The translations under genes were made by a program, and so were the position numbers. Positions 4,710 through 43,798 of a DNA stretch of 64,000 nucleotides are shown piece by piece. The notes under the pieces are model-generated. The model saw nothing but the letters and a program-made list of their open reading frames with translations, searched no databases and was not told the origin of the DNA. The first letter of the stretch is position 1. Each line of letters opens with the position of its first letter. Location of the stretch: positions 1-64,000 of the IMG/VR virus record IMGVR_UViG_3300046170_000378; one strand, written 5' to 3'.

Positions 4710-4728
4710 GGCGACTATAGAAGTCGCC
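4710..4728 (-). terminator. Probable terminator hairpin after 4758-5234
   Basis: GGCGACT-TCTAT-AGTCGCC followed by TTTGTT on the minus strand. Confidence 0.5.
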
Positions 4729-4757
4729 AATGTGAATCAACTAGTGCGCGCTACCAA

Positions 4758-5234: not shown

Positions 5235-5319
5235 ATCTTTTAGCTTTTAATTACAGTACTAATATACCACAAATAGTTGACACTAAAAAATCCAGGCTAA
5301 TAAAGTTACGAACAATTTG

Positions 5320-10327: not shown

Positions 10328-10331
10328 GTAG

Positions 10332-10788
10332 ATGAAATTTAAAAAACTCACAGGCTATCCAGAGTTTGAATTACAAGCATATGTTAAGAAGTATTTAGAA
10401 GATCATAAAGAATATGATGTTAAAATATATTTAGGATGTGATAGTCAAACTAAAGCAGATCAAACTATTTATGCAACTACTGTGGTTTTTCACGTAGCTA
10501 GCACAGGTTGTCACGTGATATATAAAAAAGAAAAGTCTACCTGTTATCAGAGACATGTGGACCAGACTATGGAAAGAAGCAGAAAAATCAGTAGAGGTCG
10601 CAGTGTACCTAAGAGAATTTGGAATAGAAATTGATACTATAGATTTGGATTACAATATTGACCCTCAACACGGCTCTAACAAATTAGTCAAAGCAGCCGT
10701 TGGATATGTAGAGTCATTGGGTTTTCAAGCTAGGTGTAAGCCTGAACTTTTACCAGGATGTTACGCAGCAGACGATATTGTAAACTAA
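10332..10788 (+). CDS. YkuK/DUF458-like RNase H-fold protein (frameshift near 10538)
   Basis: KIYLGCDSQ, TRLWKEAEKSVEVA..L, IDLDYN, SNKLVKAAVGYVESLGF..RCKPE. Confidence 0.75.
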
Positions 10789-29800: not shown

Positions 29801-31802
29801 ATCAAGTGGCTCTTCAGGTTCGAGTGGTAGAAGTGGTACTTCAGGAACTGATGGATCAAGCGGATCTTCAGGAACTGATGGATCAAGCGGATCTTCAGGT
29901 TCAAATGGTTCAAGTGGATCAAGCGGTGTAGACGGCGACAGAGGTGGAAAAGGAATTGAATCATCTAACAATGACGACCCGAATGATGCTGGTATTGTAG
30001 GAGATTACGAAGGAGTGTTATACTATTCTGCTATTGGAACAGTTTGGGTATGGGACAAAGCATCAAACATATGGAAATTTGTAGGAAGCATAAGCGGTTC
30101 TTCAGGAACTAATGGAACAAATGGTTCTTCAGGAACTGATGGTTCTTCAGGAACAAATGGTACAAATGGTTCTTCAGGAACTGATGGTTCTTCAGGAACA
30201 AATGGTACAAATGGATCGAGTGGTTCTTCGGGAACTGATGGCTCTTCAGGAACTGATGGCTCTTCAGGAACTAATGGAACAAATGGCTCTTCAGGAACTG
30301 ATGGCTCTTCAGGAACTGATGGAACAAATGGATCAAGTGGTTCTTCAGGAACTGATGGATCTTCAGGTACTAATGGATCGAGTGGTTCTTCAGGAACTGA
30401 TGGCTCTTCAGGTACAAGTGGTTCTAATGGATCTTCAGGATCGAGTGGTTCTAATGGATCTTCAGGGTCGAGTGGTACTAATGGTACTGATGGATCGAGT
30501 GGTTCTTCGGGTTACCAAGGTGCTTTAACAGGTGAAGAGAGTAATCCAAACAACAATTATACTGGCTCTTTTGCTGGACAGTTATACTTTGCATTTGATG
30601 GAACAGTTTGGTTCTGGGACGGTGCGAGTTGGAAAATAATTAACGATTTAAATGGAACTTCAGGTACTAATGGTACTAATGGATCAAGCGGTTCTTCAGG
30701 GTCAGATGGCTCTTCTGGTTCTAGTGGATCGAGCGGATCTTCAGGAACTAATGGAACTTCAGGAACTAATGGAACTAATGGTTCAAGCGGTTCTTCTGGA
30801 ACTGATGGATCAAGTGGATCAAGTGGATCTTCTGGATCTAGCGGAAAAAACGGAACTAATGGAACTTCAGGTTACCAAGGTGCGCTATCAGGTGAAGAAA
30901 ACGATCCAAATGGCACATACACTGGCTCTTTTGTAAATCAGTTATACTTTGCATTTAATGGATCAGTTTGGTTCTGGGACGGTGTGAGTTGGAAACAAGT
31001 TACTGATTTAAATGGTTCTTCTGGAACTGATGGAACTTCAGGTTCTAATGGATCAAGCGGTACTAATGGTACTAACGGTTCAAGTGGTTCAAGTGGTTCT
31101 TCAGGAACAACTACTATTGACTACAACGTAAAAGATAGAATCTTAGTATCTACTGGAAATTCTACAATAGAAGCTGAAGAAGCTCTAACATATCACAGAG
31201 AACAGAGTATTTTACACACAGCAACAAATAGAAATATCTTTGGTATTGCTGAAGAACATACAATATATGCTGGTGGTTTCGGTATAGGTAACGGTTTAGA
31301 TAAAATGGTTACTGATTATGGCCTAACTGAATGGTATAGATTTGTACCTACTGCTGAAAGATCAGAATATGGAGGAAAATCTCACTTCTCAATAGGAACA
31401 GGTTCTATGTTGGACGAAAGAGATATGTCAGCCCCACAAAATGTTATATGGGACGCATCTTGGCCAAATGGATTTGGTATACAAAAATCTACTAGAAAGC
31501 TCAAGCATGATATTATTGATTTAGATTTTAATGCTGATGAATTCTTTAAACACATGAGACCAGTTTCTTTCAAATGGAACGGAACCGATAGATTAGATTC
31601 AGGTTTTATTGCAGAAGAAGTTGCAGAATTTGATTCTAGATTGGTAGCATGGATGCCAAGTAAAGACGAAGAAAGTGGAGAAGACATTATGGAAGTATCT
31701 TCTGTAAACTATGACAAGATAACTGCATACTTAGTGAAAGTTGTTGGAGATCTTAGAGAAGAAGTTAAGTCTTTAAAAGATGAAATTAAGAAACTTAAAT
31801 AA
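26814..31802 (+). CDS. Tail fibre with Ser/Thr-rich Gly-X-Y repeats and a C-terminal peptidase S74 intramolecular chaperone
   Basis: Long (GTSGTDGSS)n runs; duplicated ~100-aa N-terminal domain; STRKLKHDI...RPVSFKWN...GFIAEEV...VNYDKI plus a terminal coiled coil. Confidence 0.8.
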   Translation: MQLRIKQILDLISSNPSNGDYFSYNSNTGQYENTAAPLDGTSVKYATTFNGPHGTDESRGPGEDLGSLTVEEGLSYIGGELITIVPVVNPENIQVARVTSYSGTTLTIEHISHTGTQSYSGSEDWNINLTGLSGTSGTSVKYATVFDAPHGTAESRGPSEDLGSLTIETGLSYIGGEYITISPVVSPENIQVARVTSYNATTGVITFEHISHTGTQSYSGSEDWNLNLSGENGSSGTSGTSGTDGSSGTDGTSGTDGSSGTNGTDGSSGSSGTNGTNGSSGVDGSSGTDGTSGTNGTDGSSGSSGTNGTDGSSGTDGTNGSSGTNGTDGSSGSSGIDGSPGWGIQMQGQVATEDDLPADDDSTRLEDGYAYIVQSDDSIWVWTQEDGWISGGSIQGPSGSSGTDGTNGTSGTDGSSGTNGTNGSSGTNGTSGTNGTSGTNGTDGSSGSSGTDGTSGTNGSSGTDGSSGTDGTNGSSGTDGSSGTDGTSGTDGTSGTNGTDGSSGSSGTDGTSGTNGSSGTNGTNGSSGSSGTDGTSGSNGSSGSSGSSGVSAQQCDGYSRITSGNLLSPNPLAEGNIQLLQSYSVHTTTAANVGYIRIGENTPGTISTIAGGERFIKIENIGDPTAYTLFNISNYNGAYKIWYISNALQYGGGADLSQDEFCVSSHTQYLPVVDEDGSAPSERGVPNTNLTFLWDNVSATSISSGDINIDVNLQNAVVGDLYQFNISATNSKGTSVATELQAINSVNNTMGSGFLTIYDQNSDSTATFIVPSSHSQTSAGLNFRDAELVQIKGLWETTKGLDSNGNEISIDTEVLLGYELFGNDGTSGTNGTNGSSGSSGSSGSNGTDGSSGSSGSNGSSGTSGSSGSSGSSGTDGTSGTDGSSGSSGTDGTSGTDGTSGTNGTSGTDGSSGSSGSSGSSGSSGSSGSSGYDVPTGATVGDLPNGEYEGQIGFTGEGLVYIWKGGAWSPYLDMNGTSGTTGTSGSDGSSGSSGTDGSSGSSGSSGRSGTSGTDGSSGSSGTDGSSGSSGSNGSSGSSGVDGDRGGKGIESSNNDDPNDAGIVGDYEGVLYYSAIGTVWVWDKASNIWKFVGSISGSSGTNGTNGSSGTDGSSGTNGTNGSSGTDGSSGTNGTNGSSGSSGTDGSSGTDGSSGTNGTNGSSGTDGSSGTDGTNGSSGSSGTDGSSGTNGSSGSSGTDGSSGTSGSNGSSGSSGSNGSSGSSGTNGTDGSSGSSGYQGALTGEESNPNNNYTGSFAGQLYFAFDGTVWFWDGASWKIINDLNGTSGTNGTNGSSGSSGSDGSSGSSGSSGSSGTNGTSGTNGTNGSSGSSGTDGSSGSSGSSGSSGKNGTNGTSGYQGALSGEENDPNGTYTGSFVNQLYFAFNGSVWFWDGVSWKQVTDLNGSSGTDGTSGSNGSSGTNGTNGSSGSSGSSGTTTIDYNVKDRILVSTGNSTIEAEEALTYHREQSILHTATNRNIFGIAEEHTIYAGGFGIGNGLDKMVTDYGLTEWYRFVPTAERSEYGGKSHFSIGTGSMLDERDMSAPQNVIWDASWPNGFGIQKSTRKLKHDIIDLDFNADEFFKHMRPVSFKWNGTDRLDSGFIAEEVAEFDSRLVAWMPSKDEESGEDIMEVSSVNYDKITAYLVKVVGDLREEVKSLKDEIKKLK

Positions 31803-31828: not shown

Positions 31829-34800
31829 ATGCCTAGAAGATCACTAAAAAGTATTGCCAATATGGTTGCAGCTATGAAGTTTGGCAGAAATGCAACAAAT
31901 ATAGCTAACGCAAAAAACGCAAAAATAGGTTTAAATAATCCTGGTTTTAAAGATGCGCATAAACCAAGTGCTTATTCTGCTTCGCAAGAATACACTGATT
32001 TATACACACTTGGCCCAATAATAGACGACATCTTAGATGCAATTCATGCTCTTGAAGATGAATCTGCCGGAATAGGTGAGTATTTACATGATCACTTTGG
32101 ATCCGAAGAAGATAAGATTCAAATACCTGCAGATTTAAGAGTAGAAATAGGAGGCGCTTTTGTTCAAGCTCTATATGAAAACTCAGACAATATAATTATA
32201 GGTGCAGACGTCTTTTTGCCTAATTCAGGTATAGTTAATTTTCAAATAACTGGAAATAATACATTACAAGTAGGTGGAGTACCAATCATTAACGCAAGTG
32301 GAGAATGGATTGGACCTTCTACGGGACTTAAGGGCCAGAAAGGTCAGAGAGGTGTAGCTGGAACTTCAGGAACTGATGGTACATCAGGATCTTCAGGTTC
32401 AAGTGGATCTTCGGGTACTGACGGATCTTCAGGTACTAATGGAACAAATGGATCTTCAGGTACTGACGGATCTTCAGGTACTAATGGAACTAGTGGTGTT
32501 GACGGAGCTAAAGGTCAAAAAGGACAGACAGGCCAAAAAGGACAAAAGGGTCAAACCGGTGCGGCAGGAACTAGTGGTACTAATGGAACCGATGGAACTA
32601 GCGGAATTAAAGGCCAAAAGGGTCAAAAAGGACAAACAGGTTCAACAGGTGCCAAGGGTAACACAGGTAACTTCGGTGGAGCTAGTTTTGATTACACGCA
32701 TGATTCTTCTACAAATGCAATGTCTGACCCAGGAAGAGGTAGAGTTAGAACAAACAGCAATACAATGTCGAGCGTTAGCTCATTAGCAATAGACGCTGAA
32801 GACGATTTTGGTAATGATATTAGTAATTTCTTAACTACTGTAGATGCATCAACATCTGCAGTTAAAGGTTTTGTAAGATTTGCAGAAAAGACAAATACTA
32901 CTTCATTTGTAACATATGCAATATATGATTTAATAAACAGATCAGGTTGGTGGGAATTAAGTGTCGATATGACTGCAACATCTGCACCAACTATTCCATT
33001 TGCAAACGGAGCAGACATTATAATGTCCTTTGTTGTAACTGGTAATGTGGGTGATAAAGGTCAAAAAGGAGCGTCAGGTGTTGATGGAATCTCTGGAACA
33101 TCTGGTCAAGACGGAACATCTGGAACTGATGGTACATCAGGATCTAGTGGATCAAGCGGTTCTTCTGGAACCGATGGATCTTCAGGTACTAATGGTACTA
33201 ATGGATCTTCAGGTTCATCTGGTTCAAGCGGAACTTCAGGTTCATCTGGTTCAAGCGGTACTAATGGTACTAATGGATCTTCGGGTTCTTCAGGATCTAG
33301 TGGATCTTCAGGTTCTTCAGGATCTAGTGGTTATCAAGGCGCAAAAAGTGGTGAATATGGAGATCCAAATAGTGTAAATCTACTTGGAGAATTTAACGGC
33401 CAATTATACTTTGATGGAAACGGTTTTGTTTGGACATGGATCTCAGCAGAAGGCGCTTGGATAAAGGTAAATAATTTAACTGGTCAAAAAGGACAAAAAG
33501 GGCAAACTGGAGCCCAAGGTATTAAAGGTGTTACTGGACCAAAAGGTAATGCTGGTTCTTCTGGAACCGATGGATCAAGTGGATCAAGTGGTTCTTCAGG
33601 ATCGAGCGGAAGAAATGGAACTAGTGGAGTTAACGGTGCTAAAGGACAAACTGGGGCACAAGGTGCTCAAGGTGCACAAGGACCACAGGGTGCTCAAGGT
33701 GTACAAGGTATTAAAGGTCAGAAAGGTCAAAAAGGTCAAACAGGAGCTCAAGGTCCTCAGGGACAAAAAGGTCAAACAGGTTCTCAAGGTTTTCAAGGAC
33801 ATGGTTATACAAAAGCTGCCTTAGATGGTGTAGATTTAGTATTAACACACACGTTAGATGGAGACATTAATGTCGGTAGAGTTTACGGAAATCAAGGTGC
33901 TCAAGGTGCTCAAGGTCAGAAAGGTCAGAAAGGTCAAACTGGTGGTCAAGGTGGTCAAGGTGCTCAAGGTATTAAAGGTGTTACTGGGCCGACCGGACCG
34001 CAAGGTGCTACTGGACCACAGGGTATTAAAGGTGTTACTGGGCCGACCGGACCGCAAGGTGCTACTGGACCACAGGGTATTAAAGGTGCTACTGGTGCTA
34101 AAGGTGTTACTGGACCTAAAGGAAACACCGGTGCTCAAGGACCTACCGGACCACAGGGACCTCAAGGTCATGGCGTTAAAACAGCCTACTTATCAGGCAC
34201 TGATTTAATTATAGATCATACATTAGAAGGTTTAATAAATGTCGGTAGAGTTTATGGAAATCAAGGTGCTAAAGGTCAGAAAGGACAAACCGGTGGCCAA
34301 GGTGGCCAAGGTGCACAAGGTATTAAAGGTGTTACTGGACCGACCGGACCTCAAGGGCCAACAGGTGCACAAGGTGCACAAGGTATAAAAGGTCAGAAAG
34401 GTCAGAAAGGTCAAACTGGAAATACTGGACCTAAAGGAAGTACAGGTGCTCAAGGACCACAGGGTCATGGCTATACAAGAGCCACTCTAGTTGGTGCAAA
34501 TTTAGTATTAACACATACACTAGACGGAGATCTTGATATTGGTAGAGTTTACGGAAATCAAGGTGCTCAAGGACCAACAGGTGCACAAGGTGCTCAAGGA
34601 CCAACAGGTGCTGGCGGTGCTAAGGGACAAAAAGGTCAAAAAGGACAAACCGGTGCTCAAGGTGGTGGAGGTGCTCAAGGAGCTAAAGGTGCAACTGGGC
34701 CAACCGGACCAAAGGGTGCTATTGGTGTTACAGGTGCTCAAGGTCCAACTGGAGCTAAGGGTCAAAAAGGACAAACTGGTGCTCAAGGTGGACAAGGTGC

Positions 34801-35059
34801 TCAAGGTATTAAAGGTGCAACTGGGCCGACAGGACCAAAGGGTTCTACCGGGCCAACTGGGCCGCAAGGTGCAACCGGACCACAAGGTGCAACCGGACCA
34901 ACACTAAACGTTTCCAATAATTCTAACAATAGAATTATCACGGCAACTGGTGGATCTACAGTAAATGCTGAGTCTGCATTAACATTCGATGGAACATATT
35001 TAAATATTAACGGAGCTGGAATATCACACGATGGCACCGTAATGAGATTTACAGTATAA
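31829..35059 (+). CDS. Collagen-like fibre protein (1076 aa), possibly the proximal long-tail-fibre (gp34-position) subunit
   Basis: Long GQK/GAQ/GPT/GIK triplet runs interrupted by repeated HTL(D/E)G..VGRVYG modules; directly precedes the gp35-like gene. Confidence 0.75.
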
Positions 35060-35083
35060 TAATAAGATAACAAATAACTTAAT

Positions 35084-36984
35084 ATGCAGTTAAATACAGA
35101 AAGAGAAACCAGAGTAAATATCGCAGGTGAAGCCGGAGGTCCATGTTCAGCTACATTGTCTGCATATGGAACATCATATAATTGCTCAGATACAAGTGCT
35201 GGTCACTTTGCTTTAGCCATTAAAGGGCAAGTAAAAGAGTATGCAGCTTCAACTAGGGGCTTGACATTATTAATCATAGATCACAGCTCACTTGAAGTAA
35301 TAACACATACAACACTTGATACATACGGTGACGATCAAGCTAGAATTAAACTGGCGGGTCTTTTAACAAATATAGTCAACGGTGAGTATGGAAATGTTAT
35401 TTTTGCACTCGCATCTCAAGACGCTATAGGTACTAATGCCACTTTGGCAGCTGCATTTAGAGAACTAAGAGCATATCATTGGTTTCAACTTCCAGGTTTA
35501 TCTAACGGTCCAACGCACAGACATCCATACGCTGCAATAGGAACAAGCAACTTAGGTATTATTAAAGAAGCTTTACATTCTAACACAGTAGGTGCAGCAC
35601 CTTCTCAGGTGACTATGAATATTCCAGATGATTGGGATACTATTGGTCACGAGGGCTATGGTCCAGATTTAAATTTTGGATCTAAGTTATCAGAATTTTC
35701 GTACACCGGAACTGGATATAGTTTTAATCATGGACCACATTTAACAGTCGAAAACTCTGGATATAAACACATAAAAGACGGTGAATATGTTAGAATGACT
35801 GGACAGATGAAAATAAGTTTAGAAAGAAAAGAAGCTGGTGGCTATGTGAGATCTTATTTTTGGAGTGCATCTACTACTGATGGATGGATTACATCTGCTA
35901 GTCACGGTAGTTATTCTACAGAATGGGAAAGATTTGAACTTTATTTTAGATGGAATAAATCATCTCAAACGGCGTCTGGTAGCAATAGTGGCGGAGGCGA
36001 ATCTATTTATTTAAGATGGGGACAATATCATTATCCTAGTAGTATTGATCCTGGAACTTCTTATATAAAAGACATTACTATACAAAAATGTGGATTTAAA
36101 CCAAACCAAGATCGCGACATAACTTTAAATTTAACCTAGTGATGCAATAGATGGTAAACAAATAAATGAATCTGTTGGTCCATTTGGAATTACAAATCCA
36201 GATAATTATTGGACCGTATTTCATTCAGAAAGAAATTTAACAGGCCGACCAAATTTAGGTGATTCTAGAATGGGTTCAGGCTTTGATACAAATAATGTAA
36301 AATGGTTTGATAGAGAGTTGACAGATAGATCACAGTACTCTATACACTGAAGGCAAGAATTTTACTGGAGACTCTAACAGATACAACGACATTGGATATG
36401 TAAATATTGACCCTACTAAAATGTACGCAGGTATGATTTGGCATTATTGTCATGAAAAGGGAAATGGTAACACATATCTAGGAACACACACTAGAAATGC
36501 ATCAGGAAGTACCGTACCAACATACGCATATGCAGGAACTAGTAACACAACTAACCCATATTGTATGTACCCTGCGGCATCTAATGTAGAGAAGAATACT
36601 TGGACACTTTGGACATATTTCTTTTTACCACATTGGTTCACTGATCAACAAGGTACAGATTTTTACAATGAAAACTGGTGTTATTGGGCTGGCAATTATG
36701 AAAACGCGAGTGCAGATAATTTATCAAAAACAGCAGGTTCTAGAGGTAGTAATGGCGGTAACATCAGAGTTTCTAGATTTAAAGAATCAGATGCACAGAT
36801 ACATTTAAGGTGGCTAGATTATTACAACACAAATGCTAACCATAAAACATGGTGGGCTTTACCTATGATTATTGAAATAGATCCACTAGATTTAGGAGCA
36901 AATGGTGCAATAGATCCATTTAAATTAATTGAAGATAATACTCAATTTAATAGTCAGTTTGGAAACATAAAAGGAATGAGTTAA
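35084..36984 (+). CDS. ILEI-domain protein resembling the T4 gp35 tail-fibre hinge (two +1 insertions near 36136 and 36345)
   Basis: RGLTLLIID...LDTYGD (ILEI-like), PYAAIGTS, DWDTIGHEGYG; continuous reading restored by removing two bases. Confidence 0.55.
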
Positions 36985-36995
36985 ATATATAGAAT

Positions 36996-37097
36996 ATGAG
37001 CAACGAAGAAAAATATACATGTCAAGTTTGTGGAAGCGACTCTAGTGGTTGTACTTCTGATCAATGCTTACCGACATTAAATCAAAACTTAGAATAA
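36996..37097 (+). CDS. 33-aa Cys-rich peptide (not in the ORF track)
   Basis: MSNEEKYTCQVCGSDSSGCTSDQCLPTLNQNLE*; fills the gap between two fibre genes; AATATATA 4 nt before the ATG. Confidence 0.5.
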   Translation: MSNEEKYTCQVCGSDSSGCTSDQCLPTLNQNLE

Positions 37098-37100
37098 GAA

Positions 37101-38351
37101 ATGGCAGATTTAAAACAAGGAACAACAGTAGGAGGTAACGAAGTATTACATACCGGAAACTTTATTACAGCCAATTACCCAGGATTTAAAGGTTCTACTG
37201 GAGCCCAAGGTGCTAAAGGTGCTACTGGACCCCAAGGTGCTACAGGACCTAAAGGTTCTACTGGAAACACTGGAGCCCAAGGTGCTAAAGGTGCTACTGG
37301 CCCTCAAGGTGGTACAGGACCACAGGGGATTAAAGGTCAAAAAGGTCAAACTGGTGCTACAGGTGCTATTGGACCGAAGGGTACTACTGGAAATACTGGG
37401 GCACAAGGTGCTAAAGGTGCTACTGGACCGACTGGTGCTACCGGCCCTCAAGGAGCACAAGGTGCTACCGGCCCTCAAGGTGGTGGAGGTGCAACTGGTG
37501 CCAAAGGTCAAAAAGGTCAAAAGGGTGCAACGGGTGCTCAAGGAGCTCAAGGTGTAATTGGACCAAAAGGAAACGTAGGAAGTACAGGACCAACGGGTGC
37601 TCAAGGTGCTAAAGGTCAGAAAGGACAAACAGGTGCTCAAGGTGGCGGTGGTGCTAAAGGTGCTACTGGACCCACTGGACCTACCGGACCTAAAGGAAGT
37701 ACAGGCGCTCAAGGGCCACAAGGTCATGGCGTTAAAACAGCCTACTTATCAGGTGTTGATTTAATTATAGACCACACATTAGATGGTTTAATAAATGTTG
37801 GTAGAGTTTACGGTGCTCAAGGTGCTAAAGGTCAGAAAGGACAAACAGGTGCTCAAGGTGGCGGTGGTGCCACTGGAGCTAAAGGTCAGAAAGGACAAAC
37901 AGGTGCCACTGGACCACAAGGTGCTCAAGGTGGTGGAGGTGCTCAAGGCGCTAAAGGCCAGAAAGGTGCACCAGGTGCTACCGGACCGATCGGACCAGAA
38001 GGTAAAACTGGAGCCCAAGGTGCAACAGGTGCTCAAGGTGGAATTGGACCAAAAGGTAATACAGGAAATACCGGTGCCGCTGGAGCTAAAGGTCAAAAAG
38101 GTGCACCAGGTGCTACCGGACCGACTGGACCTAAAGGAAATACTGGTGCTACTGGACCTACCGGTGCTACTGGACCTACCGGTGCTACTGGACCTGCTGG
38201 TCAAGATGGCGGTGGAGGATGTATTGCCCTATTCGTAGACGGTCGAGATTCAAACGCATGTCTTGATTCTGTAAATGTCGATACTAGAGCTGGCGCTATG
38301 CAACTGGTATTTGATAACGGCGATGCTTTCACAGCAATGTTACTAAAATAA
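37101..38351 (+). CDS. Collagen-like fibre protein with a T4 gp36-like N-terminus
   Basis: [21 protein letters not shown], then roughly 100 Gly-X-Y triplets rich in GAK/GQK/GPK/GPT. Confidence 0.75.
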
Positions 38352-38368
38352 ATACATACTAAATAATT

Positions 38369-38398
38369 AAAAGACCTAATTCGTTAGGTCTTTTTTTT
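38369..38398 (+). terminator. Intrinsic terminator
   Basis: AAAAGACCTAA-TTCG-TTAGGTCTTTT followed by a T run. Confidence 0.8.
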
Positions 38399-38454
38399 GC
38401 TCTAAACTTTTGTAAGATATATAATATAATAGTATGATATTAATAATACACTAA

Positions 38455-39051
38455 ATGGCTTATAGTTTTAAAAGAGATCAAAACGATCCACAACAATATT
38501 ATTGGTTTGAGTCAGGTTTGACTAAAGAAGAACTTATTAAATTTAATAACCTTATTCTAAATTTAGAATATCATGATGCCACGATCATCGGTGATTCTGC
38601 CAGTGGAGAGAAATCATTAGATGTTAGATCTTCTAAAATTAAATGGATTCCGCATTCTAATGATTGGACTTGGTTATATAATAAATTTCAGGATATGATT
38701 ACCGAAGCCAATGGTGAATTATGGAATTTCAATATCTATGACATTGTTGAAGAAATTCAATATACAGAATATCACGCATCTGATAGTGGTCATTATGACT
38801 GGCACCAAGATATTGGCCCTGGAGATGCATCTCTAAGAAAGATTTCGTTGACGGTTCAATTGACAGATTCTGATCTATACGAAGGAGGAGACCTAGAAAT
38901 ATGGCAAGGCGGTGAAGTTAGAGATAAAACACCGAGAGGATCAGGAATAGTTATTATATTTCCAAGCTACATGATGCATAGAGTTACACCAGTTACAAAA
39001 GGTGTTAGAAGGAGTTTAGTATTGTGGGTCGGAGGAGAACATTATAAATAA
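38455..39051 (+). CDS. 2OG-Fe(II) oxygenase (prolyl-4-hydroxylase/PKHD-like)
   Basis: YDWHQD (HxD), RKISLTVQL, YEGGDL, IFPSYMMHRVTPVTKGVRRSLV.W. Confidence 0.85.
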   Translation: MAYSFKRDQNDPQQYYWFESGLTKEELIKFNNLILNLEYHDATIIGDSASGEKSLDVRSSKIKWIPHSNDWTWLYNKFQDMITEANGELWNFNIYDIVEEIQYTEYHASDSGHYDWHQDIGPGDASLRKISLTVQLTDSDLYEGGDLEIWQGGEVRDKTPRGSGIVIIFPSYMMHRVTPVTKGVRRSLVLWVGGEHYK

Positions 39052-39057
39052 TTAAAT

Positions 39058-40092
39058 ATGAGGATTTTGTTTTATGCAGGCTATCAAAGAGTCCCATTAA
39101 ATCAAACAATAAACACTGGAGGAGGGACAGAAATAGCTTTAGTTTCTATAGCCGAAGAAATGGTAAAATTTGGATATGAGGTAATAATCTCAGGTGAAGT
39201 AGAAAAATTAGGTAAAATAAATGGAGTTACTTGGCTGCCTACCCATGAGATTCACCAAACATATGATTATTTTGATGTTATAATAAGTGCAAGCTATATT
39301 CACTTTTTGCATGAATTTAAAAACTATACTTCTGCAAAAAAAGTATTTTGGGCACACAACACACACCACCATGCATGGTATAATGGGTTTGAACTTACTA
39401 GTGCAGATGAGTTAGTCAAAGAAGTAGACGCTACGGTGTGTTTAACAAATTGGCACGCAGACATATGGTCAAAAAAATATAACATCGATAGAGATTCTAT
39501 AAAAATTATAGGAAATGGAATTAACACCAATAGCTTTATTGGAAATCCACCTAAAATTAAAAATAAATTTATATGGTCATCAGAGCCAGAAAGAGGTTTG
39601 ATGTCTTTATTGCACAATTGGCCTAAAATAAAAATGATTAATAATAGTGCATCATTGGACATATATTCACCTGAGTATGGTCTAGATCAATTAGAGCATA
39701 TGATGCCTATTATTAATATGTTAGAAGATGTAAACGTTATTGGAAATAAAAGTCAATCAGAACTGCATGATGCTATGTTAAGAGCAGAATATTGGTGTTA
39801 TATTACAGATTATGAAGAAACATATTGTATCACCGCTTTAGAAATGCAATATGCTAAAGTAATACCTATTGCCACCAAAGCAGCTGCACTTAATGAAACT
39901 ATAAAATCGGGAATTATATGTGACTCTACAGATGAAACAAATTGGAATAGCGCTATATTATCTATAGGTAGAGCGGGTTCACAAATAAAAGAAAAGGTCA
40001 TTGAGTCTAATTATAATTGGGCAAAGTGTCAAACATGGAACCAAAGATCATATGATTGGAAAAACCTAATAGAGAAATTAACACATGAGTAA
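39058..40092 (+). CDS. GT4-like (GT-B) glycosyltransferase
   Basis: GGGTEIAL, IIGNGI, FIWSSEPERGL, EETYCITALE. Confidence 0.8.
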   Translation: MRILFYAGYQRVPLNQTINTGGGTEIALVSIAEEMVKFGYEVIISGEVEKLGKINGVTWLPTHEIHQTYDYFDVIISASYIHFLHEFKNYTSAKKVFWAHNTHHHAWYNGFELTSADELVKEVDATVCLTNWHADIWSKKYNIDRDSIKIIGNGINTNSFIGNPPKIKNKFIWSSEPERGLMSLLHNWPKIKMINNSASLDIYSPEYGLDQLEHMMPIINMLEDVNVIGNKSQSELHDAMLRAEYWCYITDYEETYCITALEMQYAKVIPIATKAAALNETIKSGIICDSTDETNWNSAILSIGRAGSQIKEKVIESNYNWAKCQTWNQRSYDWKNLIEKLTHE

Positions 40093-41380
40093 ATTAAATT
40101 TTGATAAAATCTATATAATATCACTGGACCATAGTCAAAGCGGATATGATAAGATAGCTAAAAAATTAAATGACTTAGGCCTAACTAAATCTGTGCCGTA
40201 TGAGATAATAAATGCACATGATGGAAATACAGATAAGTTGCCAGAAAATTATCACGTTTATGATAAGTGGCAATTATCAGGAAGTAACAATAAATGGTGG
40301 TCTCAAGATGTAACTGCCTCAGAAATAGGATGTGCAATAAGCCATATCAAATGTTGGCAAAAAATAATTAAAGATAATGTTAGATCAGCTTTAATTTTAG
40401 AAGAAGACTTTTTACCGCAAAAACCAATATCTGATTTAAATCAACCTGAGCTAATTTATGATTTAGCGTACTTAGGTAAGTGGTTATTGCCTGAAAAAGA
40501 AGATACTAAAATACCAAATGATGCACAGTGGTTTTATTCAGGTGCGTCTTATAATACACATGCATATATTATTACTAATTCATGTGCTCTTAAATTCCTA
40601 GACTATAACTTACATAAAAATATAATTCCAGTAGATGAGTTTATTATAGCAACATACAGCGATCACCCTAGAAAAGACGTGAGAGAATTGTATGCAAATA
40701 AAAACATAGTAACTATTACACCTAGTGAAGATTATATTGAACAAGAAACTAACACTATGAAAAATACAACATACTTTGAAATATTAGATGATTCTAATTG
40801 GGAAGAATGGAAATCAAAATATGTCAATCACACATTAGCTAAAGGCGAATATGATCTAATGCTAGATGATTTAGGCAACAACGTATACGAATTTCAATTA
40901 TTTACAGAAAAATTCTGTAAAGAAGCTGTTGCACTTGCAGAAGCCAAAGATAATTGGACAATAGACAGACATGAATTTTATCCAACAAACGATGTTCTTT
41001 TACAGGACATTGATTTACAAAAAATATATCATAGAGTATTAAAGGAAGTTGTATATCCTCTTTGTATCCACGTATGGACTCTAGAGGGTGCAGGATGGAA
41101 AGATATGTTTAGTGAAAACTTTATGGCTAGATATACAACAGACAGACAATCACACCTATCATTGCACCACGATTTTAGTCATGTAACTATGGTGGTTAAA
41201 CTTAACGATGAGTTTGAGGGTGGAGGAACTTGGTTTCCAAAATACAACTTGCTATCAAATCCTAAAAAGATAGGAACAGCAACACTGCATCCAGGAATGG
41301 TAACTCACTTACACGGTGCTAGACCAATAGATTCTGGAAAAAGATACATTATAGTATCGTTTATGAGAAAGGAAAAGTAA
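40085..41380 (+). CDS. Fusion of a GT25/COLGALT-like glycosyltransferase and a PLOD-like lysyl hydroxylase domain
   Basis: N-half: KIYIISL, EIGCAISHIKCW, ALILEED, SYNTHAYII, IIPVDEFI...HP. C-half: FTEKFC, LHHDFS (HxD), FEGGGTWF, LHPGMVTHLHGA, GKRYIIVSF. Confidence 0.8.
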   Translation: MSKLNFDKIYIISLDHSQSGYDKIAKKLNDLGLTKSVPYEIINAHDGNTDKLPENYHVYDKWQLSGSNNKWWSQDVTASEIGCAISHIKCWQKIIKDNVRSALILEEDFLPQKPISDLNQPELIYDLAYLGKWLLPEKEDTKIPNDAQWFYSGASYNTHAYIITNSCALKFLDYNLHKNIIPVDEFIIATYSDHPRKDVRELYANKNIVTITPSEDYIEQETNTMKNTTYFEILDDSNWEEWKSKYVNHTLAKGEYDLMLDDLGNNVYEFQLFTEKFCKEAVALAEAKDNWTIDRHEFYPTNDVLLQDIDLQKIYHRVLKEVVYPLCIHVWTLEGAGWKDMFSENFMARYTTDRQSHLSLHHDFSHVTMVVKLNDEFEGGGTWFPKYNLLSNPKKIGTATLHPGMVTHLHGARPIDSGKRYIIVSFMRKEK

Positions 41381-41397: not shown

Positions 41398-41826
41398 ATG
41401 AAAAAAGAAATAACATTTAACAAAGTAGTTGGTGATGATGGTCACTTAGTTTCACCAGTCTTAAAGAATGGTGCAAAAAACTACTTAATCGACATCGACG
41501 GTACAATCACAGATGACGTGCCAAATGAAGAACCCGAAAGAATGTCAGTAGTATTACCATATAATGGCTCTGTAGAAACATTAAATAAATGGTATGACGA
41601 AGGACATGTAATTACTTTCTTTACTTCAAGAACTGAAGAGGTAAGAGATATTACAGAAACGTGGCTAAATAAACACGGATTCAAATACCACGGTCTATTA
41701 ATGGGTAAACCTAGGGGTGGAAACTACCATTGGGTTGATAATCATATCGTAAAGGGTACTAGATACGAAGGCAAGTGGGCAGACTTGGTTAGAGAAGAAA
41801 GAACAATAGAAGTTTTTCCCTCTTAG
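41398..41826 (+). CDS. HAD-superfamily phosphatase
   Basis: LIDIDGTI, FFTSRTEE, LMGKPRGG. Confidence 0.8.
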   Translation: MKKEITFNKVVGDDGHLVSPVLKNGAKNYLIDIDGTITDDVPNEEPERMSVVLPYNGSVETLNKWYDEGHVITFFTSRTEEVRDITETWLNKHGFKYHGLLMGKPRGGNYHWVDNHIVKGTRYEGKWADLVREERTIEVFPS

Positions 41827-41837
41827 ATATATAGTAC

Positions 41838-42833
41838 ATGATTATAAAAGATTTCCAAACATTTTTAAACGAAAGGTTTGCTGAACATGAGATTCCGCAA
41901 ATTCAAATCATTATGCGAGATATTGGCTTATCGCCAAAACAAGAGGATTTTACAAAAAGAATGTTGGCGGAAATATATGAAAAATATGCTCACTTAGTAC
42001 TAGTTGACGATGATGGGTATAATCAAGACGAGAGGATTCCAGACAATAGAAGACATAACAAAACTAAATATGATGAACCTATTTTAAACTTTATGTCGGT
42101 GTCTCATGTTGAACTTGAAAAAATGAAAGCTCGAGTCTATAACAAAGTAGAAGATATTCAAATAGCTGCAGATAAAATTAAATTCTACAAAGAATTTGAT
42201 CAAACAGATTTTGTTCCAAACTGTGCATACAAACTAGACGACATAGAAAAATTAGAACTTCCAATTATAGCTAAGCCAGCGATAGGTGAAAGTGCACAAG
42301 GAATCGAGAAGTTTGATACGTATGAAGATGCTAAGAGTTCTAAAATGAAATTCGATGTTTGGCAAGAGGCTAAAGAAATAGACAGAGAATTTAGAGCCTT
42401 TGTTATGAATAATAAAATTATCCACTTGTGCGAAAGAGTTACCAATACTAAAAACGACAAATCAGTTGGTAAAAAAGATGCTGATGAAAAAATAGATCTA
42501 GTGTACCTTGATCAAGACATGTCCAAGTTTCCACACATGGATGAAATAGAGAAAATTAAAGAGGAGCTTAGTAAAAAAGTAAAGCTAGAATTTTATAACA
42601 TTGATTTAATGTTAGATAAAGACGGGACGATGTGGGTACCAGAACTTAATGGAAATCCAGGAATTGGTCCAGGTAGTTTTACGGTAATTTACAAGCATTG
42701 GATAGAATGGGTTTATGATCAAGAATTGAGTGAAGAAGTAGATAAAGACCTTAAAGAAATGGCAAAAGCATACCGAGAAGGTATGAAAAAGGAGCATCCT
42801 GATGAATACGCGGGTAGTTTATCACCAATATAA
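41838..42833 (+). CDS. ATP-grasp (RimK-like) ligase with a capsid-targeting-like N-terminus
   Basis: LPIIAKPAIGESAQGI, EFRAFV, IDLM, ELNGNPG; starts MIIKDFQTFLNE. Confidence 0.75.
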   Translation: MIIKDFQTFLNERFAEHEIPQIQIIMRDIGLSPKQEDFTKRMLAEIYEKYAHLVLVDDDGYNQDERIPDNRRHNKTKYDEPILNFMSVSHVELEKMKARVYNKVEDIQIAADKIKFYKEFDQTDFVPNCAYKLDDIEKLELPIIAKPAIGESAQGIEKFDTYEDAKSSKMKFDVWQEAKEIDREFRAFVMNNKIIHLCERVTNTKNDKSVGKKDADEKIDLVYLDQDMSKFPHMDEIEKIKEELSKKVKLEFYNIDLMLDKDGTMWVPELNGNPGIGPGSFTVIYKHWIEWVYDQELSEEVDKDLKEMAKAYREGMKKEHPDEYAGSLSPI

Positions 42834-42868
42834 AAAAGTAAGATAATTCTTACTGCGATATATAATTT

Positions 42869-43798
42869 ATGAAAATTAAAGATTTCCAAACATTTATTAA
42901 TGAACGCGATAGTCAATTGCGCAAAGTAATCATGTGTGTTTCTACCGAACTAAGTGACTTTGAGTTTGTAATAGGTGATGATTTTCATGCTAGTCAATAT
43001 ATGGAATTATTTACAAAGGGAGATAATCCTAAAAAAGCCACATTACCTGTAATTAATTTTTGCAATACACACACTGAAAGATTATTAGAAGCGGGTACTC
43101 CAAAGGAATTAATTTATAATCCTAAAGAGAAAAAGATGGAAATAGCATCTAAAGTAAAATGGCATAAAACTCACAACAATTCTGAGCACGTGCCTAAAAC
43201 TATCTTAAACGTAGATGACATTGATCAACTTAAATTTCCTATTATAGCAAAACCTGAGAACAGATTTTCAGGCCAAGGTATAATTAAAATCGATTCACTC
43301 GAGGATGCTAAGGATATGGATCTTTCTGACTTTGAAGTTTTCAGCGAGAAGATAGACATCGATGAAGAACATAGAATAATGATGTGGAGAGGCGAGCCTG
43401 TTATGTGGGTACAAAGAGTACATGGTAACGAGGAGACCAAAAAGATGACTAAGAAAAAGGACGATAAGTTATACTTTAAATATGTACTTAAGAAAATGGA
43501 AGACATGCCACAGGATTGGCAAGCAGTCTTTGATGAATTTGCAGAAGCACATAATGAATTAGACATATATTCAGTTGACTTGATGGTAGATACAGACGGA
43601 AAACCGTGGGTAGTAGAAATGTCTTCTGAATTTATGCCGCTATATGGTGTAATGTCATATTACTATAAAAAAGTTTTTGAAGATTTTTATGGTAAAAAAC
43701 TAAATAAAGAAGAAGAGTCACAGATAGATATGCTTCAGCAAAAAGACGTTGAAGCTACTATTAATTTTGATCAAAAAAGATTTTCAGTAGAAAAATAA
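42869..43798 (+). CDS. ATP-grasp ligase paralog with a capsid-targeting-like N-terminus
   Basis: FPIIAKPENRFSGQGI, EHRIMM, VDLM...WVVEMS; starts MKIKDFQTFINE. Confidence 0.7.
   Translation: MKIKDFQTFINERDSQLRKVIMCVSTELSDFEFVIGDDFHASQYMELFTKGDNPKKATLPVINFCNTHTERLLEAGTPKELIYNPKEKKMEIASKVKWHKTHNNSEHVPKTILNVDDIDQLKFPIIAKPENRFSGQGIIKIDSLEDAKDMDLSDFEVFSEKIDIDEEHRIMMWRGEPVMWVQRVHGNEETKKMTKKKDDKLYFKYVLKKMEDMPQDWQAVFDEFAEAHNELDIYSVDLMVDTDGKPWVVEMSSEFMPLYGVMSYYYKKVFEDFYGKKLNKEEESQIDMLQQKDVEATINFDQKRFSVEK

What the first reader, a model, noticed from the sequence alone, without database searches (positions are those of the whole stretch)
31829..41380. Phage-encoded collagen maturation system: a fused COLGALT-like galactosyltransferase / PLOD-like lysyl hydroxylase next to Lys-rich collagen fibres
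Seen in sequence: ORF 40085-41380 joins a GT25 domain (EIGCAISHIKCW, ALILEED, SYNTHAYII, IIPVDEFI..Y..HP) to a 2OG-Fe(II) domain (LHHDFS, EGGGTWF, LHPGMVTHLHGA, GKRYIIVSF). The fibre genes just upstream (31829, 37101, also 16128) contain dozens of Gly-X-Lys triplets (GQK, GAK, GPK, GIK, GDK). The enzyme operon and the fibre genes sit downstream of the same GATATATA motif. Established: PLOD lysyl hydroxylases act on Y-position Lys in X-Lys-Gly, and COLGALT (GT25) then galactosylates the hydroxylysine. Animals use separate proteins for the two steps, and a PLOD homolog is known from Mimivirus (L230). From recall, the two halves match human COLGALT1 (PVDEFL...KHP) and the PLOD C-terminal domain (HHD..., LHPGRLTHYHEG, RYIMVSF) closely. 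Inference: this phage hydroxylates and glycosylates its own collagen tail fibres with one enzyme, aided by the adjacent P4H-like oxygenase (38455) and GT4 (39058). I do not know of this pathway having been described in a bacteriophage.
Basis: partly seen in the sequence, partly recalled or inferred. Interest (0 to 1): 0.92.

Follow-up and report, generated by a model that had tools for sequence, protein, structure and literature searches.

The report
Phage collagen lysine hydroxylase-glycosyltransferase module
A large marine bacteriophage encodes, beside its collagen-like tail-fibre genes, one protein joining the two enzyme types that animals use to hydroxylate and then sugar-coat collagen lysines; relatives of it sit next to collagen genes in many other phages, a pathway I could not find described for any bacterial virus.

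Summary
The core observation holds. ORF 40085-41380 (431 aa) is a fusion of two domains. The N-terminal half is a COLGALT1-type GT25 catalytic domain with its Mn-binding E-x-D and its Cys conserved. The C-terminal half is a PLOD/L230-type lysyl hydroxylase domain with the H-x-D...H triad and the 2OG-binding Arg conserved (TM 0.86 to mimivirus L230).

Two upstream fibre genes, 31829 and 37101, are true collagens. They carry 71 Lys at the Y position of Gly-X-Y and 1 at X, which is the X-Lys-Gly geometry a lysyl hydroxylase needs.

Across related loci, 17 of 21 independent lineages with at least 6 kb of upstream sequence have collagen ORFs upstream, against at most 7 of 80 control loci.

The adjacent GT4 gene belongs to the same pathway. 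It overlaps the enzyme gene by 8 nt, and in other phages it is fused in frame to give GT4-GT25-LH proteins of 718-830 aa. Cultured cyanophages and a roseophage lack the GT4 and instead carry a PLOD/R699-type glucosyltransferase domain inside the enzyme.

Three details fail. ORF 16128 is not collagen. The GATATATA motif is a general phage promoter-like element. The "P4H-like" oxygenase has almost no Y-position proline to act on.

No activity has been shown. I rate this a new variant of the known mimivirus and animal system.

The parts
26814..31802 (+). Collagen-like tail fibre protein (1662 aa). 237 triplets of G-[TS]-[SND] type with one Lys at Y and one at X. C-terminal intramolecular chaperone (Peptidase_S74).
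   Evidence: Pfam Collagen E 1.5e-93 and Peptidase_S74 E 1.4e-6. C-terminus hits tail-fibre PHROGs. Triplet counts. GATATATA motif at 26778.
31829..35059 (+). Lys-rich collagen fibre protein (1076 aa), in the position of T4 gp34. 205 triplets; Lys 45 at Y and 0 at X; Pro 29 at X and 0 at Y. Proposed main substrate.
35084..36139 (+). Long-tail-fibre proximal connector (gp35-like).
   Evidence: phrog_1154, E 1.3e-12.
36421..36984 (+). Long-tail-fibre hinge / distal connector (gp36-like).
   Evidence: phrog_16097, E 1.2e-8.
37101..38351 (+). Lys-rich collagen fibre protein (416 aa), in the position of T4 gp37. 107 triplets; Lys 26 at Y and 1 at X; Pro 23 at X and 2 at Y. Proposed substrate.
38416..38425 (+). 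GATATATAAT promoter-like motif after a T-run, at the head of the enzyme operon.
38455..39051 (+). 2OG-Fe(II) oxygenase with a PHD/PKHD-type prolyl-hydroxylase-like fold (H117, D119, H175, R185 invariant). Substrate unknown.
   Evidence: Pfam 2OG-FeII_Oxy_3 E 3e-13. PiuC/Sbal_3634 E 3e-5. Model pLDDT 87, best fold match PHD2 at TM 0.75. Invariant residues. Conserved next to the enzyme in most lineages.
39058..40092 (+). GT4-type (GT-B) glycosyltransferase. Its stop overlaps the start of the next gene by 8 nt. Proposed second sugar transferase.
   Evidence: Pfam Glycos_transf_1 and Glyco_transf_4. Overlap ATGAGTAA. Directly upstream of the enzyme in nearly all two-domain loci. Fused in frame to GT25-LH in other phages.
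40085..40729 (+). GT25 domain of the fused enzyme (aa 1-215), homologous to the catalytic GT2 domain of COLGALT1. E106-E107-D108 (nt 40400-40408) corresponds to the Mn-binding E435-D436-D437. C83 corresponds to C412.
   Evidence: PMC12003778.
40751..40768 (+). Flexible inter-domain linker (aa 223-228).
   Evidence: pLDDT below 50 in the model.
40796..41380 (+). PLOD/L230-type lysyl hydroxylase domain (aa 238-431). Fe ligands H361 and D363 (nt 41165-41173) and H410 (41312-41314). 2OG-binding R420 (41342-41344).
41398..43798 (+). HAD-like phosphatase (41398-41826) and two paralogous ATP-grasp ligases (41838-42833 and 42869-43798). Conserved downstream in the closest lineages only, so probably accessory or unrelated.
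17109..18586 (+). A further collagen-coding stretch with Lys at Y (8+5+3, none at X), split over at least four frames. A possible extra substrate gene, either broken or misassembled.
   Evidence: One long ORF at this position in relatives L063 and L065.

Best explanation
This is a late-gene module that matures the phage's own collagen-like long tail fibres inside the infected bacterium.

Proposed steps. (1) The nascent, still unfolded chains of the fibre proteins 31829 and 37101 expose dozens of X-Lys-Gly sites. (2) The C-terminal domain of the 431-aa enzyme uses Fe2+, 2-oxoglutarate and O2 to convert Y-position lysines to 5-hydroxylysine. (3) The tethered N-terminal GT25 domain uses Mn2+ and a UDP-hexose to attach the first sugar to the new hydroxyl group. 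By analogy with COLGALT1 this would be galactose, but the identity is not known. (4) The GT4 enzyme, whose gene overlaps the enzyme gene by 8 nt and is therefore probably translationally coupled, adds a second sugar. (5) The chains then trimerise into glycosylated triple helices.

Fusing the domains does the job that the LH3/COLGALT1 complex does in animals, namely handing the intermediate from one active site to the next.

Shown here: homology, fold, conserved catalytic residues, substrate geometry, conserved synteny and gene fusions. Inferred: every chemical step, the sugar identities, the order of action, and the benefit to the phage. Likely benefits are fibre solubility or stability, protease resistance, or receptor recognition.
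For: Sequence. The LH half matches L230 (E 6e-27) and LH3 (E 4e-21), against only 3e-4 for P4H. The GT25 half matches COLGALT1 GT2 (E 2e-13), against 0.01 for bacterial GT25.

Structure. The model has pLDDT 90. Foldseek gives the L230 LH domain at TM 0.86, rmsd 2.1 A and 33% identity, LH3 at E 1e-23, and COLGALT1 at E 9e-18.

Catalytic residues. H361/D363/H410/R420, E106/D108 and C83 are invariant in 37 aligned homologs, and the motifs are retained in 110-120 of 120 homologs. E435, D437 and C412 of COLGALT1 are essential by mutagenesis (PMC12003778).

Substrate geometry. Lys is 71 at Y and 1 at X in the two fibres, and 939 at Y against 25 at X pooled over lineage representatives.

Synteny. 17 of 21 lineages with at least 6 kb upstream have collagen ORFs upstream, and in the loci I inspected these lie on the same strand. 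The control rate is 7 of 80 loci (Fisher p 2e-10), and 4 of those 7 come from enzyme-carrying contigs. The same holds in the cultured phages S-8S55, S-PRM1, S-CAM9 and CRP-6.

GT4 linkage. There are in-frame GT4-GT25-LH ORFs of 718-830 aa, and lengths of 740-860 aa are the commonest among the strongest hits in the exhaustive search. The alternative architecture GT25 + R699/LH3-type GT + LH has no GT4 neighbour.

Feasibility. Mimiviral hydroxylases are active in E. coli (PMC9546862).
Against: No biochemical or proteomic data exist for any member.

Lys at Y is also the generally preferred position in collagens, so the bias is necessary but not diagnostic.

Some lineages keep the enzyme with few or no nearby Gly-X-Lys sites. 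L007/L008, L028 and L053/L055 have no collagen within the sequence held. L011 has 8 Lys in 775 triplets. In the L016 lineage the fibre slots hold Thr/Ser-rich repeat proteins without Gly-X-Y, although that contig has a collagen ORF with 4 Lys at Y and 2 at X elsewhere (L064).

The non-catalytic GT1 scaffold domain of COLGALT1 is absent.

Donor sugar and anomeric outcome cannot be read from sequence. Mimivirus L230 puts glucose, not galactose, on hydroxylysine.
Confidence: 0.7

Rival explanations
1. The hydroxylase acts on collagen lysines as proposed, but the glycosyltransferases (GT25 and/or GT4) mainly decorate Ser/Thr or other acceptors on the fibres. Candidates are the Lys-free G-[TS]-[SND] collagen 26814, or the Thr/Ser-rich repeat fibres of the L016 lineage. 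On this reading hydroxylysine serves another role, such as helix stabilisation or cross-linking.
For: A Lys-free, Ser/Thr-rich collagen heads the fibre cluster here and in L010 and L011. The L016 lineage keeps GT4 and GT25-LH next to Thr/Ser-rich non-collagen fibres. GT4 enzymes have broad acceptor ranges (general knowledge of the family).
Against: In most loci examined GT25 is fused to the hydroxylase, and where it is a separate gene (L055, L062) it sits immediately beside it; the reversed-order locus L056 was not examined for this. Permanent association is expected if hydroxylysine is the acceptor. The GT25 half is much closer to the hydroxylysine-specific COLGALT1 than to other GT25 enzymes. 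No lysyl oxidase-like gene was noticed in the locus.
Confidence: 0.12
2. The enzyme does not target the fibres. It is an auxiliary or host-takeover gene that modifies host envelope glycans (GT25 is the LPS family) or a host or other phage protein, and its position next to fibre genes reflects only shared late expression.
For: Pfam and JGI label the family as an LPS biosynthesis GT25. A few lineages show no collagen within 10 kb. A split homolog sits in an Aquimarina bacterial scaffold with no phage or collagen genes nearby.
Against: Co-localisation with collagen recurs across 17 of 21 lineages and four unrelated phage types: a jumbo phage, T4-like cyanophages, a 45-kb roseophage, and small contigs. 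The best homologs are the collagen-specific enzymes. Bacterial GT25 structures match about 10 orders of magnitude worse.
Confidence: 0.08
3. The module is a decayed or non-functional acquisition, for example from a giant virus or a eukaryote.
For: A neighbouring collagen gene at 17.1-18.6 kb is frameshifted in this assembly.
Against: There are hundreds of full-length homologs at 50-94% identity with all catalytic motifs retained. There are 112 clusters at 50% identity with E no higher than 1e-30. Operon structure is conserved and fusions have arisen in several architectures. All this indicates purifying selection.
Confidence: 0.02

Closest known systems
Acanthamoeba polyphaga mimivirus collagen-modification set: L230 (lysyl hydroxylase + hydroxylysyl glucosyltransferase), R699 (galactosylhydroxylysyl glucosyltransferase), R655 (GT25-like, uncharacterised), L593 (prolyl hydroxylase)
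   Same: A virus that encodes both its own collagens and the enzymes that hydroxylate and glycosylate collagen lysine. L230 is also a GT-LH fusion with the LH domain at the C-terminus. The LH domains superimpose at TM 0.86 with 33% identity. The cyanophage homologs contain an R699-like GT domain (E 2e-33).
   Different: The host is a eukaryote, not a bacterium. The GT half of L230 is of the LH3/PLOD type, not GT25. In mimivirus the GT25 homolog R655 is a separate protein that matches the window's GT25 only weakly (E 0.015). The phage versions add a GT4 partner or fusion that is not known from mimivirus. The phage collagens are tail fibres, not capsid fibrils.
Human LH3/PLOD3-COLGALT1 (GLT25D1) complex
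   Same: The same two catalytic domain families act in succession on Y-position Lys. The Fe triad and Arg of LH3, and the EDD Mn site and Cys412 of COLGALT1 GT2, are conserved. The physical coupling achieved in animals by a complex (PDB 8zgc; PMC11897130) is achieved here by covalent fusion.
   Different: The phage protein lacks the GT and accessory domains of LH3 and the GT1 scaffold domain of COLGALT1. It is cytoplasmic rather than in the ER lumen. Identities are low (about 20-33%). The second sugar transferase is a GT-B GT4 rather than the GT-A domain of LH3, except in the cyanophage/roseophage type.
Bacterial GT25 LPS/LOS glycosyltransferases (Pfam PF01755 founders; PDB 8xlz beta-1,4-galactosyltransferase)
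   Same: The same Pfam family and GT-A-like fold.
   Different: Much weaker similarity (E 0.013 against 2e-13 for COLGALT1). They act on lipo-oligosaccharide and are never reported fused to a lysyl hydroxylase.
Tandem 2OG-Fe(II) oxygenase clusters of cyanophages, and predicted hydroxylation of bacterial collagen-like and tail-collar proteins (Iyer et al. 2010, PMC2938197)
   Same: The earlier prediction that bacterial and phage dioxygenases modify co-encoded glycine-rich collagen-like proteins. Small 2OG oxygenases flank the enzyme here and in cyanophages.
   Different: That work concerned beta-hydroxylase, phytanoyl-CoA hydroxylase and JmjC families coupled to sulfotransferases. It named neither PLOD-type lysyl hydroxylases nor GT25, and the word glycosyltransferase does not occur in the paper.

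Membership tests
PLOD/L230-type collagen lysyl hydroxylase domain | Double-stranded beta-helix with the Fe(II) ligands His-X-Asp...His | tested here: met
   H361-H362-D363 and H410 align with the LH3 and L230 ligands. They are invariant in 37 homologs and the motifs are present in 110-120 of 120.
PLOD/L230-type collagen lysyl hydroxylase domain | 2-oxoglutarate-binding Arg ten residues after the distal His (the R-Y-I-x-V-S-F strand) | tested here: met
   R420 in GKRYIIVSF aligns with the RYI(M/L)VSF of LH3 and L230. Invariant.
PLOD/L230-type collagen lysyl hydroxylase domain | Whole-domain similarity, including the N-terminal helical part that other P4H-like oxygenases lack, and closer to LH than to other oxygenases | tested here: met
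   The alignment covers L230 residues 32-234 of 235. TM 0.86 and rmsd 2.1 A. 98 bits for LH against 23 bits for P4H.
PLOD/L230-type collagen lysyl hydroxylase domain | 5-hydroxylation of Lys in X-Lys-Gly peptides | not testable with these tools
   Needs an enzyme assay or virion mass spectrometry.
PLOD/L230-type collagen lysyl hydroxylase domain | Fe2+-stabilised tail-to-tail dimer (L230/LH2; PMC5802723) | not tested
   Only a monomer model was made.
COLGALT (GLT25D) hydroxylysine galactosyltransferase | GT25 catalytic (GT2) domain above the Pfam threshold and closest to COLGALT1 | tested here: met
   PF01755 at 79 bits against a cut-off of 24. COLGALT1 residues about 297-519, E 2e-13. Foldseek E 9e-18.
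COLGALT (GLT25D) hydroxylysine galactosyltransferase | Unusual E-D-D Mn2+ site (E435, D437) and Cys412 after the G-x-x-G uridine clamp, all essential by mutagenesis (PMC12003778) | tested here: met
   E106-E107-D108 and S79-E-I-G82-C83 align with them. E106, D108, G82 and C83 are invariant, and position 79 is Gly in at least 90% of homologs but Ser in the window protein.
COLGALT (GLT25D) hydroxylysine galactosyltransferase | Two-domain architecture with an N-terminal non-catalytic GT1 scaffold that mediates dimer and LH3 complex formation | tested here: not met
   The phage protein begins directly with the GT2-like domain at residue 3. It is therefore a relative of the catalytic domain, not a full COLGALT ortholog.
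COLGALT (GLT25D) hydroxylysine galactosyltransferase | UDP-galactose donor, beta-1-O linkage to hydroxylysine | not testable with these tools
   Donor specificity cannot be read from these alignments.
Mimivirus L230-type bifunctional enzyme | LH3/PLOD-type GT-A domain N-terminal to the LH domain | tested here: not met
   The window protein has GT25 instead. PF25342 (the PLOD GT domain) is present only in the cyanophage and roseophage homologs.
Collagen triple-helix repeat proteins (PF01391) | Long uninterrupted Gly-X-Y runs | tested here: met
   ORFs 26814, 31829 and 37101 have 237, 205 and 107 triplets in runs of 11-61. Pfam E 1.5e-93, 1.7e-79 and 1.5e-38. ORF 16128 has none.
Collagen prolyl 4-hydroxylase (for ORF 38455) | P4H-type 2OG oxygenase core with H-x-D...H and a basic 2OG ligand | tested here: met
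   PF13640, E 3e-13. H117, D119, H175 and R185 are invariant.
Collagen prolyl 4-hydroxylase (for ORF 38455) | Closest to collagen P4Hs, with Y-position Pro (X-Pro-Gly) substrate available | tested here: not met
   The best matches are PiuC/YbiX-type PKHD hydroxylases and PHD2. The window's three collagen ORFs have only 3 Pro at Y against 53 at X. Pooled over lineages, 169 at Y against 2465 at X.
GT4 / GT-B glycosyltransferase (ORF 39058) | Glyco_transf_4 N-domain plus Glycos_transf_1 C-domain | tested here: met
   PF13439 at 32.4 bits and PF00534 at 33.7 bits, both above their cut-offs. No solved relative by sequence.

The most novel reading that the evidence does not exclude
Bacteriophage tail fibres carry hydroxylysine-linked mono- or disaccharides made in the bacterial cytoplasm by a self-contained phage module (LH + GT25 + GT4, or LH + GT25 + R699-type GT). 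This would be the metazoan-type collagen lysine modification pathway operating in viruses of prokaryotes. It is widespread in the ocean, including T4-like cyanophages, and is possibly older than, or a donor to, the animal PLOD/COLGALT pair. The single-chain three-activity enzymes would also be ready-made tools for producing glycosylated collagen in bacteria.
Probability: 0.55. Interest if true: 0.85.

Novelty: new variant of a known kind. Interest (0 to 1): 0.74.

Why it matters
Hydroxylysine glycosylation of collagen is treated as a hallmark of animal extracellular matrix, with mimivirus as the single viral curiosity. Reviews state that prokaryotic and phage collagens are in most cases unmodified (PMC8968730). 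Phage P4H-type genes are called cryptic auxiliary genes (PMC9301287).

If this module works as predicted, three things follow.

1. A new class of virion post-translational modification exists in abundant marine phages and probably affects fibre stability and host recognition.

2. The many unexplained 2OG-Fe(II) oxygenase and glycosyltransferase genes near cyanophage fibre genes gain a concrete function.

3. The origin of the animal PLOD and COLGALT enzymes becomes testable against a large prokaryotic-virus clade.

There is also a practical side. Compact enzymes native to bacteria that combine two or three of the activities address a stated obstacle, namely that glycosylated collagen cannot yet be produced in bacterial expression systems (PMC9546862).

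Tried and rejected
- Megablast of the enzyme region against the 50,697 phage records gave no match. The phage has no close sequenced relative.

- The thymidylate-synthase control loci turned out to be partly confounded. 4 of the 7 collagen-positive control loci are from contigs that carry the enzyme (one is the window itself) and 2 more are close kin. I report both the conservative contrast (7/80) and the cleaned one (1/74).

- PHROG searches of the non-collagen N-terminal and internal parts of 31829, 26814 and 37101 gave nothing useful except tail-fibre hits for the C-terminus of 26814.

- A PDB sequence search with the GT4 gave no hit. NCBIfam gave only sub-threshold hits for all six operon proteins.

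- The association between the P4H-like gene and X-position proline is weak (Mann-Whitney p 0.04, with only 3 lineages lacking the gene). I treat it as a hint only.

- I considered that ORF 16128 might be the head of a long collagen gene. Its own frame ends at 16868 and the collagen frames start after 17109. I did not read across the stops.

- The genome-contig scan was limited to two exact peptide patterns and found only 2 loci. It cannot show that cellular homologs are rare.

It was rerun without that row. One Pfam call failed on wrong coordinates.

- No paper on a phage lysyl hydroxylase/GT25 system was found in six literature searches. The library covers open-access papers only.

Full report
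**What the window is.** The window is the first 64 kb of a 212-kb IMG/VR viral contig (IMGVR_UViG_3300046170_000378). It has no tRNAs, about 33-44% GC, and almost all genes from about 6.9 kb onward on the + strand. Several markers place it among large tailed phages:
- T4-type long-tail-fibre connectors (phrog_1154 and phrog_16097).
- A tail-fibre C-terminal chaperone.
- Thymidylate synthase, an AAA protease and a helicase.

The helicase's best matches are an uncultured 462-kb phage, the Lak megaphages of Prevotella and a 218-kb Chryseobacterium phage. The nearest cellular-assembly hits for the enzyme lie in a Flavobacteriaceae MAG and in an Aquimarina scaffold. A marine Bacteroidota host is therefore a reasonable guess, but it is only an inference. 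Megablast finds no close sequenced phage.

**The enzyme.**
- Pfam places GT25 at residues 7-187 (E 5e-22).
- Against all PDB sequences, residues 238-427 match the lysyl hydroxylase domain of mimivirus L230 (E 6e-27) and human LH3 (E 4e-21). Prolyl 4-hydroxylases reach only E 3e-4.
- Residues 3-210 match COLGALT1 (E 6e-13 for the whole protein, 2e-13 for the half alone). Bacterial GT25 enzymes and mimivirus R655 reach only E about 0.01.
- An AlphaFold model built on 37 homologs has mean pLDDT 90, with two domains joined by a disordered linker at residues 223-228.
- Foldseek puts the C-terminal domain on L230 at TM 0.86, rmsd 2.1 A and 33% identity. The whole model matches LH3 at E 1e-23, and the N-terminal half matches COLGALT1 at E 9e-18.

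**Catalytic residues.** H361, D363, H410 and R420 align with the Fe and 2-oxoglutarate ligands of LH3 and L230. The COLGALT1 structure paper shows three things: the GT2 domain is the catalytic one, its Mn2+ is held by an unusual E435-D436-D437 motif, and E435A, D437A and C412S mutants are inactive (PMC12003778). In the alignment these residues correspond to E106-E107-D108 and C83. All of them are invariant in the 37-sequence alignment, and the motifs persist in 110-120 of the 120 listed homologs. The protein lacks the non-catalytic GT1 domain of COLGALT1 and the GT and accessory domains of LH3. It is therefore a minimal fusion of the two catalytic domains, not an ortholog of either animal protein.

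**The proposed substrates.** ORFs 31829-35059 and 37101-38351 are collagens with 205 and 107 Gly-X-Y triplets.
- Lys is at Y 45 and 26 times, and at X 0 and 1 times.
- Pro is at X 29 and 23 times, and at Y 0 and 2 times.
- The residues before Lys are mainly Gln, Ala, Ile and Pro.

The two genes flank the gp35-like and gp36-like connectors, so they occupy the positions of T4 gp34 and gp37, the two half-fibres. That assignment is an inference from gene order. A third and larger collagen, 26814-31802, heads the cluster. Its 237 triplets are G-[TS]-[SND] with one Lys at Y and one at X, and it ends in a Peptidase_S74 chaperone. It is therefore not a substrate for a lysyl hydroxylase.

However, a collagen-coding stretch with Lys at Y does lie at 17109-18586. 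It is broken over at least four frames, whereas relatives have one long ORF at this position.

**Is the link to collagen more than local coincidence?** I fetched 58 viral loci and 2 cellular-assembly loci through the enzyme, plus four cultured phages. Clustering the LH domains at 85% identity gives 33 lineages.
- Of the 21 lineages with at least 6 kb upstream, 17 have collagen ORFs upstream, and 15 of those have at least 4 Lys at Y. In the loci I inspected, these ORFs lie on the same strand as the enzyme.
- Of 80 control loci (1.35 Mb) fetched through the window's thymidylate synthase, 7 have a collagen ORF. Four of those are from enzyme-carrying contigs and two more are close kin.
- Fisher p is 2e-10 on the conservative count and 4e-14 on the cleaned count.
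- Pooled over lineage representatives, Lys is 939 at Y and 25 at X.

The pattern recurs in unrelated phage types. These include T4-like Kyanoviridae (S-8S55, S-PRM1 and S-CAM9), whose 1824-1830-aa fibre proteins hold one 59-triplet segment with 22-23 Lys at Y (S-PRM1 and S-CAM9). They also include the 45-kb Roseobacter phage CRP-6.

One caveat: Lys generally prefers the Y position in collagens, so the position bias is a precondition for the model and not proof of it.

**The GT4 neighbour.** ORF 39058-40092 has the Glyco_transf_4 and Glycos_transf_1 domains. Its stop overlaps the enzyme's start by 8 nt (ATGAGTAA). A GT4 homolog sits directly upstream of the two-domain enzyme in nearly every locus.

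In a divergent lineage (L011, L030, L034, L037, L039, L042-L045) the GT4 is fused in frame with the enzyme, giving GT4-GT25-LH proteins of 718-830 aa. I verified this with an independent ORF list and with Pfam. In the exhaustive search of 1.84 billion representatives, lengths of 740-860 aa are the commonest among the strongest hits. That search returned 2785 proteins at E no higher than 1e-3 and 112 clusters at E no higher than 1e-30.

The cultured cyanophage and roseophage proteins (589-621 aa) have no GT4 neighbour. Instead they carry a PF25342 "PLOD GT" domain between GT25 and LH. That domain aligns with LH3 residues 18-234 and with mimivirus R699 (E 2e-33), the characterised galactosylhydroxylysyl glucosyltransferase (PMC9546862). 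Two different second glycosyltransferases thus occupy the same functional slot. This is what one expects if the pathway ends in a disaccharide on hydroxylysine. Split versions with separate GT25 and LH genes also exist (L055; Aquimarina).

**The "P4H-like" neighbour.** ORF 38455-39051 is a 2OG-Fe(II) oxygenase (PF13640) with invariant H117, D119, H175 and R185. Its nearest sequence relatives are PKHD-type hydroxylases of the PiuC/YbiX kind. Its model (pLDDT 87) is closest to HIF prolyl hydroxylase PHD2 (TM about 0.75) and to bacterial PPHD.

It is conserved next to the enzyme in most lineages. But the classical collagen P4H substrate, Y-position Pro, is almost absent here. It might act on the abundant X-position Pro, for which there is a weak association (p 0.04), or on another residue. 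I leave its role open.

**Promoter motif.** GATATATA occurs 12 times, always on the + strand, against 4.75 expected. It usually extends to GATATATAAT, often follows a terminator-like T run, and lies 12-40 nt before a start codon. It precedes 26814 and 38455, both ATP-grasp genes, and several unrelated genes. It looks like a real phage promoter class, but it says little specific about this system.

**Exceptions.**
- L007/L008 have thymidylate synthase, a LOG-family protein and an M42 peptidase upstream, and no collagen within 10 kb.
- L028 and L053/L055 also lack nearby collagen.
- L011 has only 8 Lys in 775 triplets.
- In the L016 lineage the fibre slots hold two Thr/Ser-rich repeat proteins with no Gly-X-Y, and the P4H-like gene is missing. 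The same contig has a collagen ORF with 4 Lys at Y and 2 at X near its thymidylate synthase (L064).

These cases keep alive the rival that the glycosyltransferases may also, or instead, decorate Ser/Thr-rich fibres.

**Comparison with what is known.** The mimivirus set (L230, R699, R655 and L593) and the human LH3/COLGALT1 complex are the closest known systems. The window's module works like them but is a member of neither architecture: it has no GT1 scaffold, no PLOD-type GT domain, and an added GT4.

Automatic annotations already hint at the function. JGI labels one homolog "collagen beta-1,O-galactosyltransferase", and UniProt labels an uncultured Caudovirales protein "procollagen-lysine 5-dioxygenase". 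Six full-text searches found no paper describing such a system in a bacteriophage. Iyer et al. 2010 predicted hydroxylation of bacterial collagen-like proteins, but by other oxygenase families.

**Verdict.** It is a new variant of a known kind of system, widespread in marine phages, and directly testable in cultured phages. All chemical steps remain inferred.

Noticed in passing
window 17109-18586 (+), with 18583-18951 and 19046-19942: A collagen-coding stretch (GPK/GDK/GIK triplets, Lys only at Y) is split over at least four shifted frames. Related phages have one long ORF at this position (L063:11147-13909 and L065:14283-20429). The following C-terminal domain (18583-18951) is paralogous to the C-terminus of ORF 19046-19942. 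It is either a broken gene or an assembly error in repeats.
   Followed up: partly
window 26814-31802: A 1662-aa collagen made almost entirely of G-[TS]-[SND] triplets (237), with one Lys at Y and one at X and one Pro at each position. It ends in a Peptidase_S74 chaperone. The same kind of Ser/Thr collagen heads the fibre cluster in L010 and L011. It is a candidate for Ser/Thr O-glycosylation, but this was not tested.
   Followed up: partly
window 31829-35059 (aa 660-686, 783-809, 882-908) and 37101-38351 (aa 211-237): A 27-residue non-collagen module interrupts the triple-helix regions three times in one fibre and once in the other. Two copies are nearly identical between the two proteins. 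It is likely a knot or hinge element, or a registration element.
   Followed up: no
window 41398-43798: A HAD-like phosphatase and two paralogous ATP-grasp ligases (weak RimK/TTL-like hits), each ATP-grasp gene with its own GATATATA motif. They are conserved directly downstream of the enzyme in the closest lineages but absent from the distant ones and from cyanophages. Function unknown; a peptide-ligase type of protein modification is conceivable.
   Followed up: partly
window, 12 sites (10517, 16090, 21928, 23217, 26778, 38416, 41826, 42857, 45703, 45787, 55495, 60209): A GATATATA(AT) motif, found only on the + strand, 12-40 nt upstream of starts and often after a terminator-like T run. It is a likely phage-specific promoter class.
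   Followed up: partly
L016:1478-4927 and L016:4977-7901: Two giant (1149 and 974 aa) Thr/Ser-rich repeat proteins with regularly spaced aromatic and Lys/Arg residues. They occupy the fibre slots in place of collagens in one lineage that still keeps GT4 and GT25-LH but lacks the P4H-like gene.
   Followed up: no
L034:9017-11344, L011:8918-11302, L044:8879-11347: Single-chain GT4-GT25-LH proteins (775-823 aa). In the 1.84-billion-protein search, lengths of 740-860 aa are the commonest among the strongest hits.
   Followed up: yes
L062 (Aquimarina sp. RZ0, NZ_VTZU01000089.1) 4271-6337: A split version (a 460-aa GT25-containing protein followed by a 215-aa LH) in a bacterial isolate scaffold, flanked by IS200-like and DDE transposases and an ECF sigma factor, with no collagen or phage genes nearby.
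   Followed up: partly
L056:515-12051: Reversed order: the LH region (10001-10564) lies upstream of the GT25 region (11386-12009). This follows a giant ORF of about 2330 aa with a short collagen segment of 28 triplets, 18 of them with Lys at Y.
   Followed up: no
protein P0044: One full-length homolog cluster is recorded on a contig of 104 Mb, which may be a eukaryotic chromosome-scale assembly or contamination.
   Followed up: no
window 1-6000: The first ~6 kb have genes on the - strand, higher GC (0.40-0.44) and slightly negative GC skew, unlike the rest of the window.
   Followed up: no
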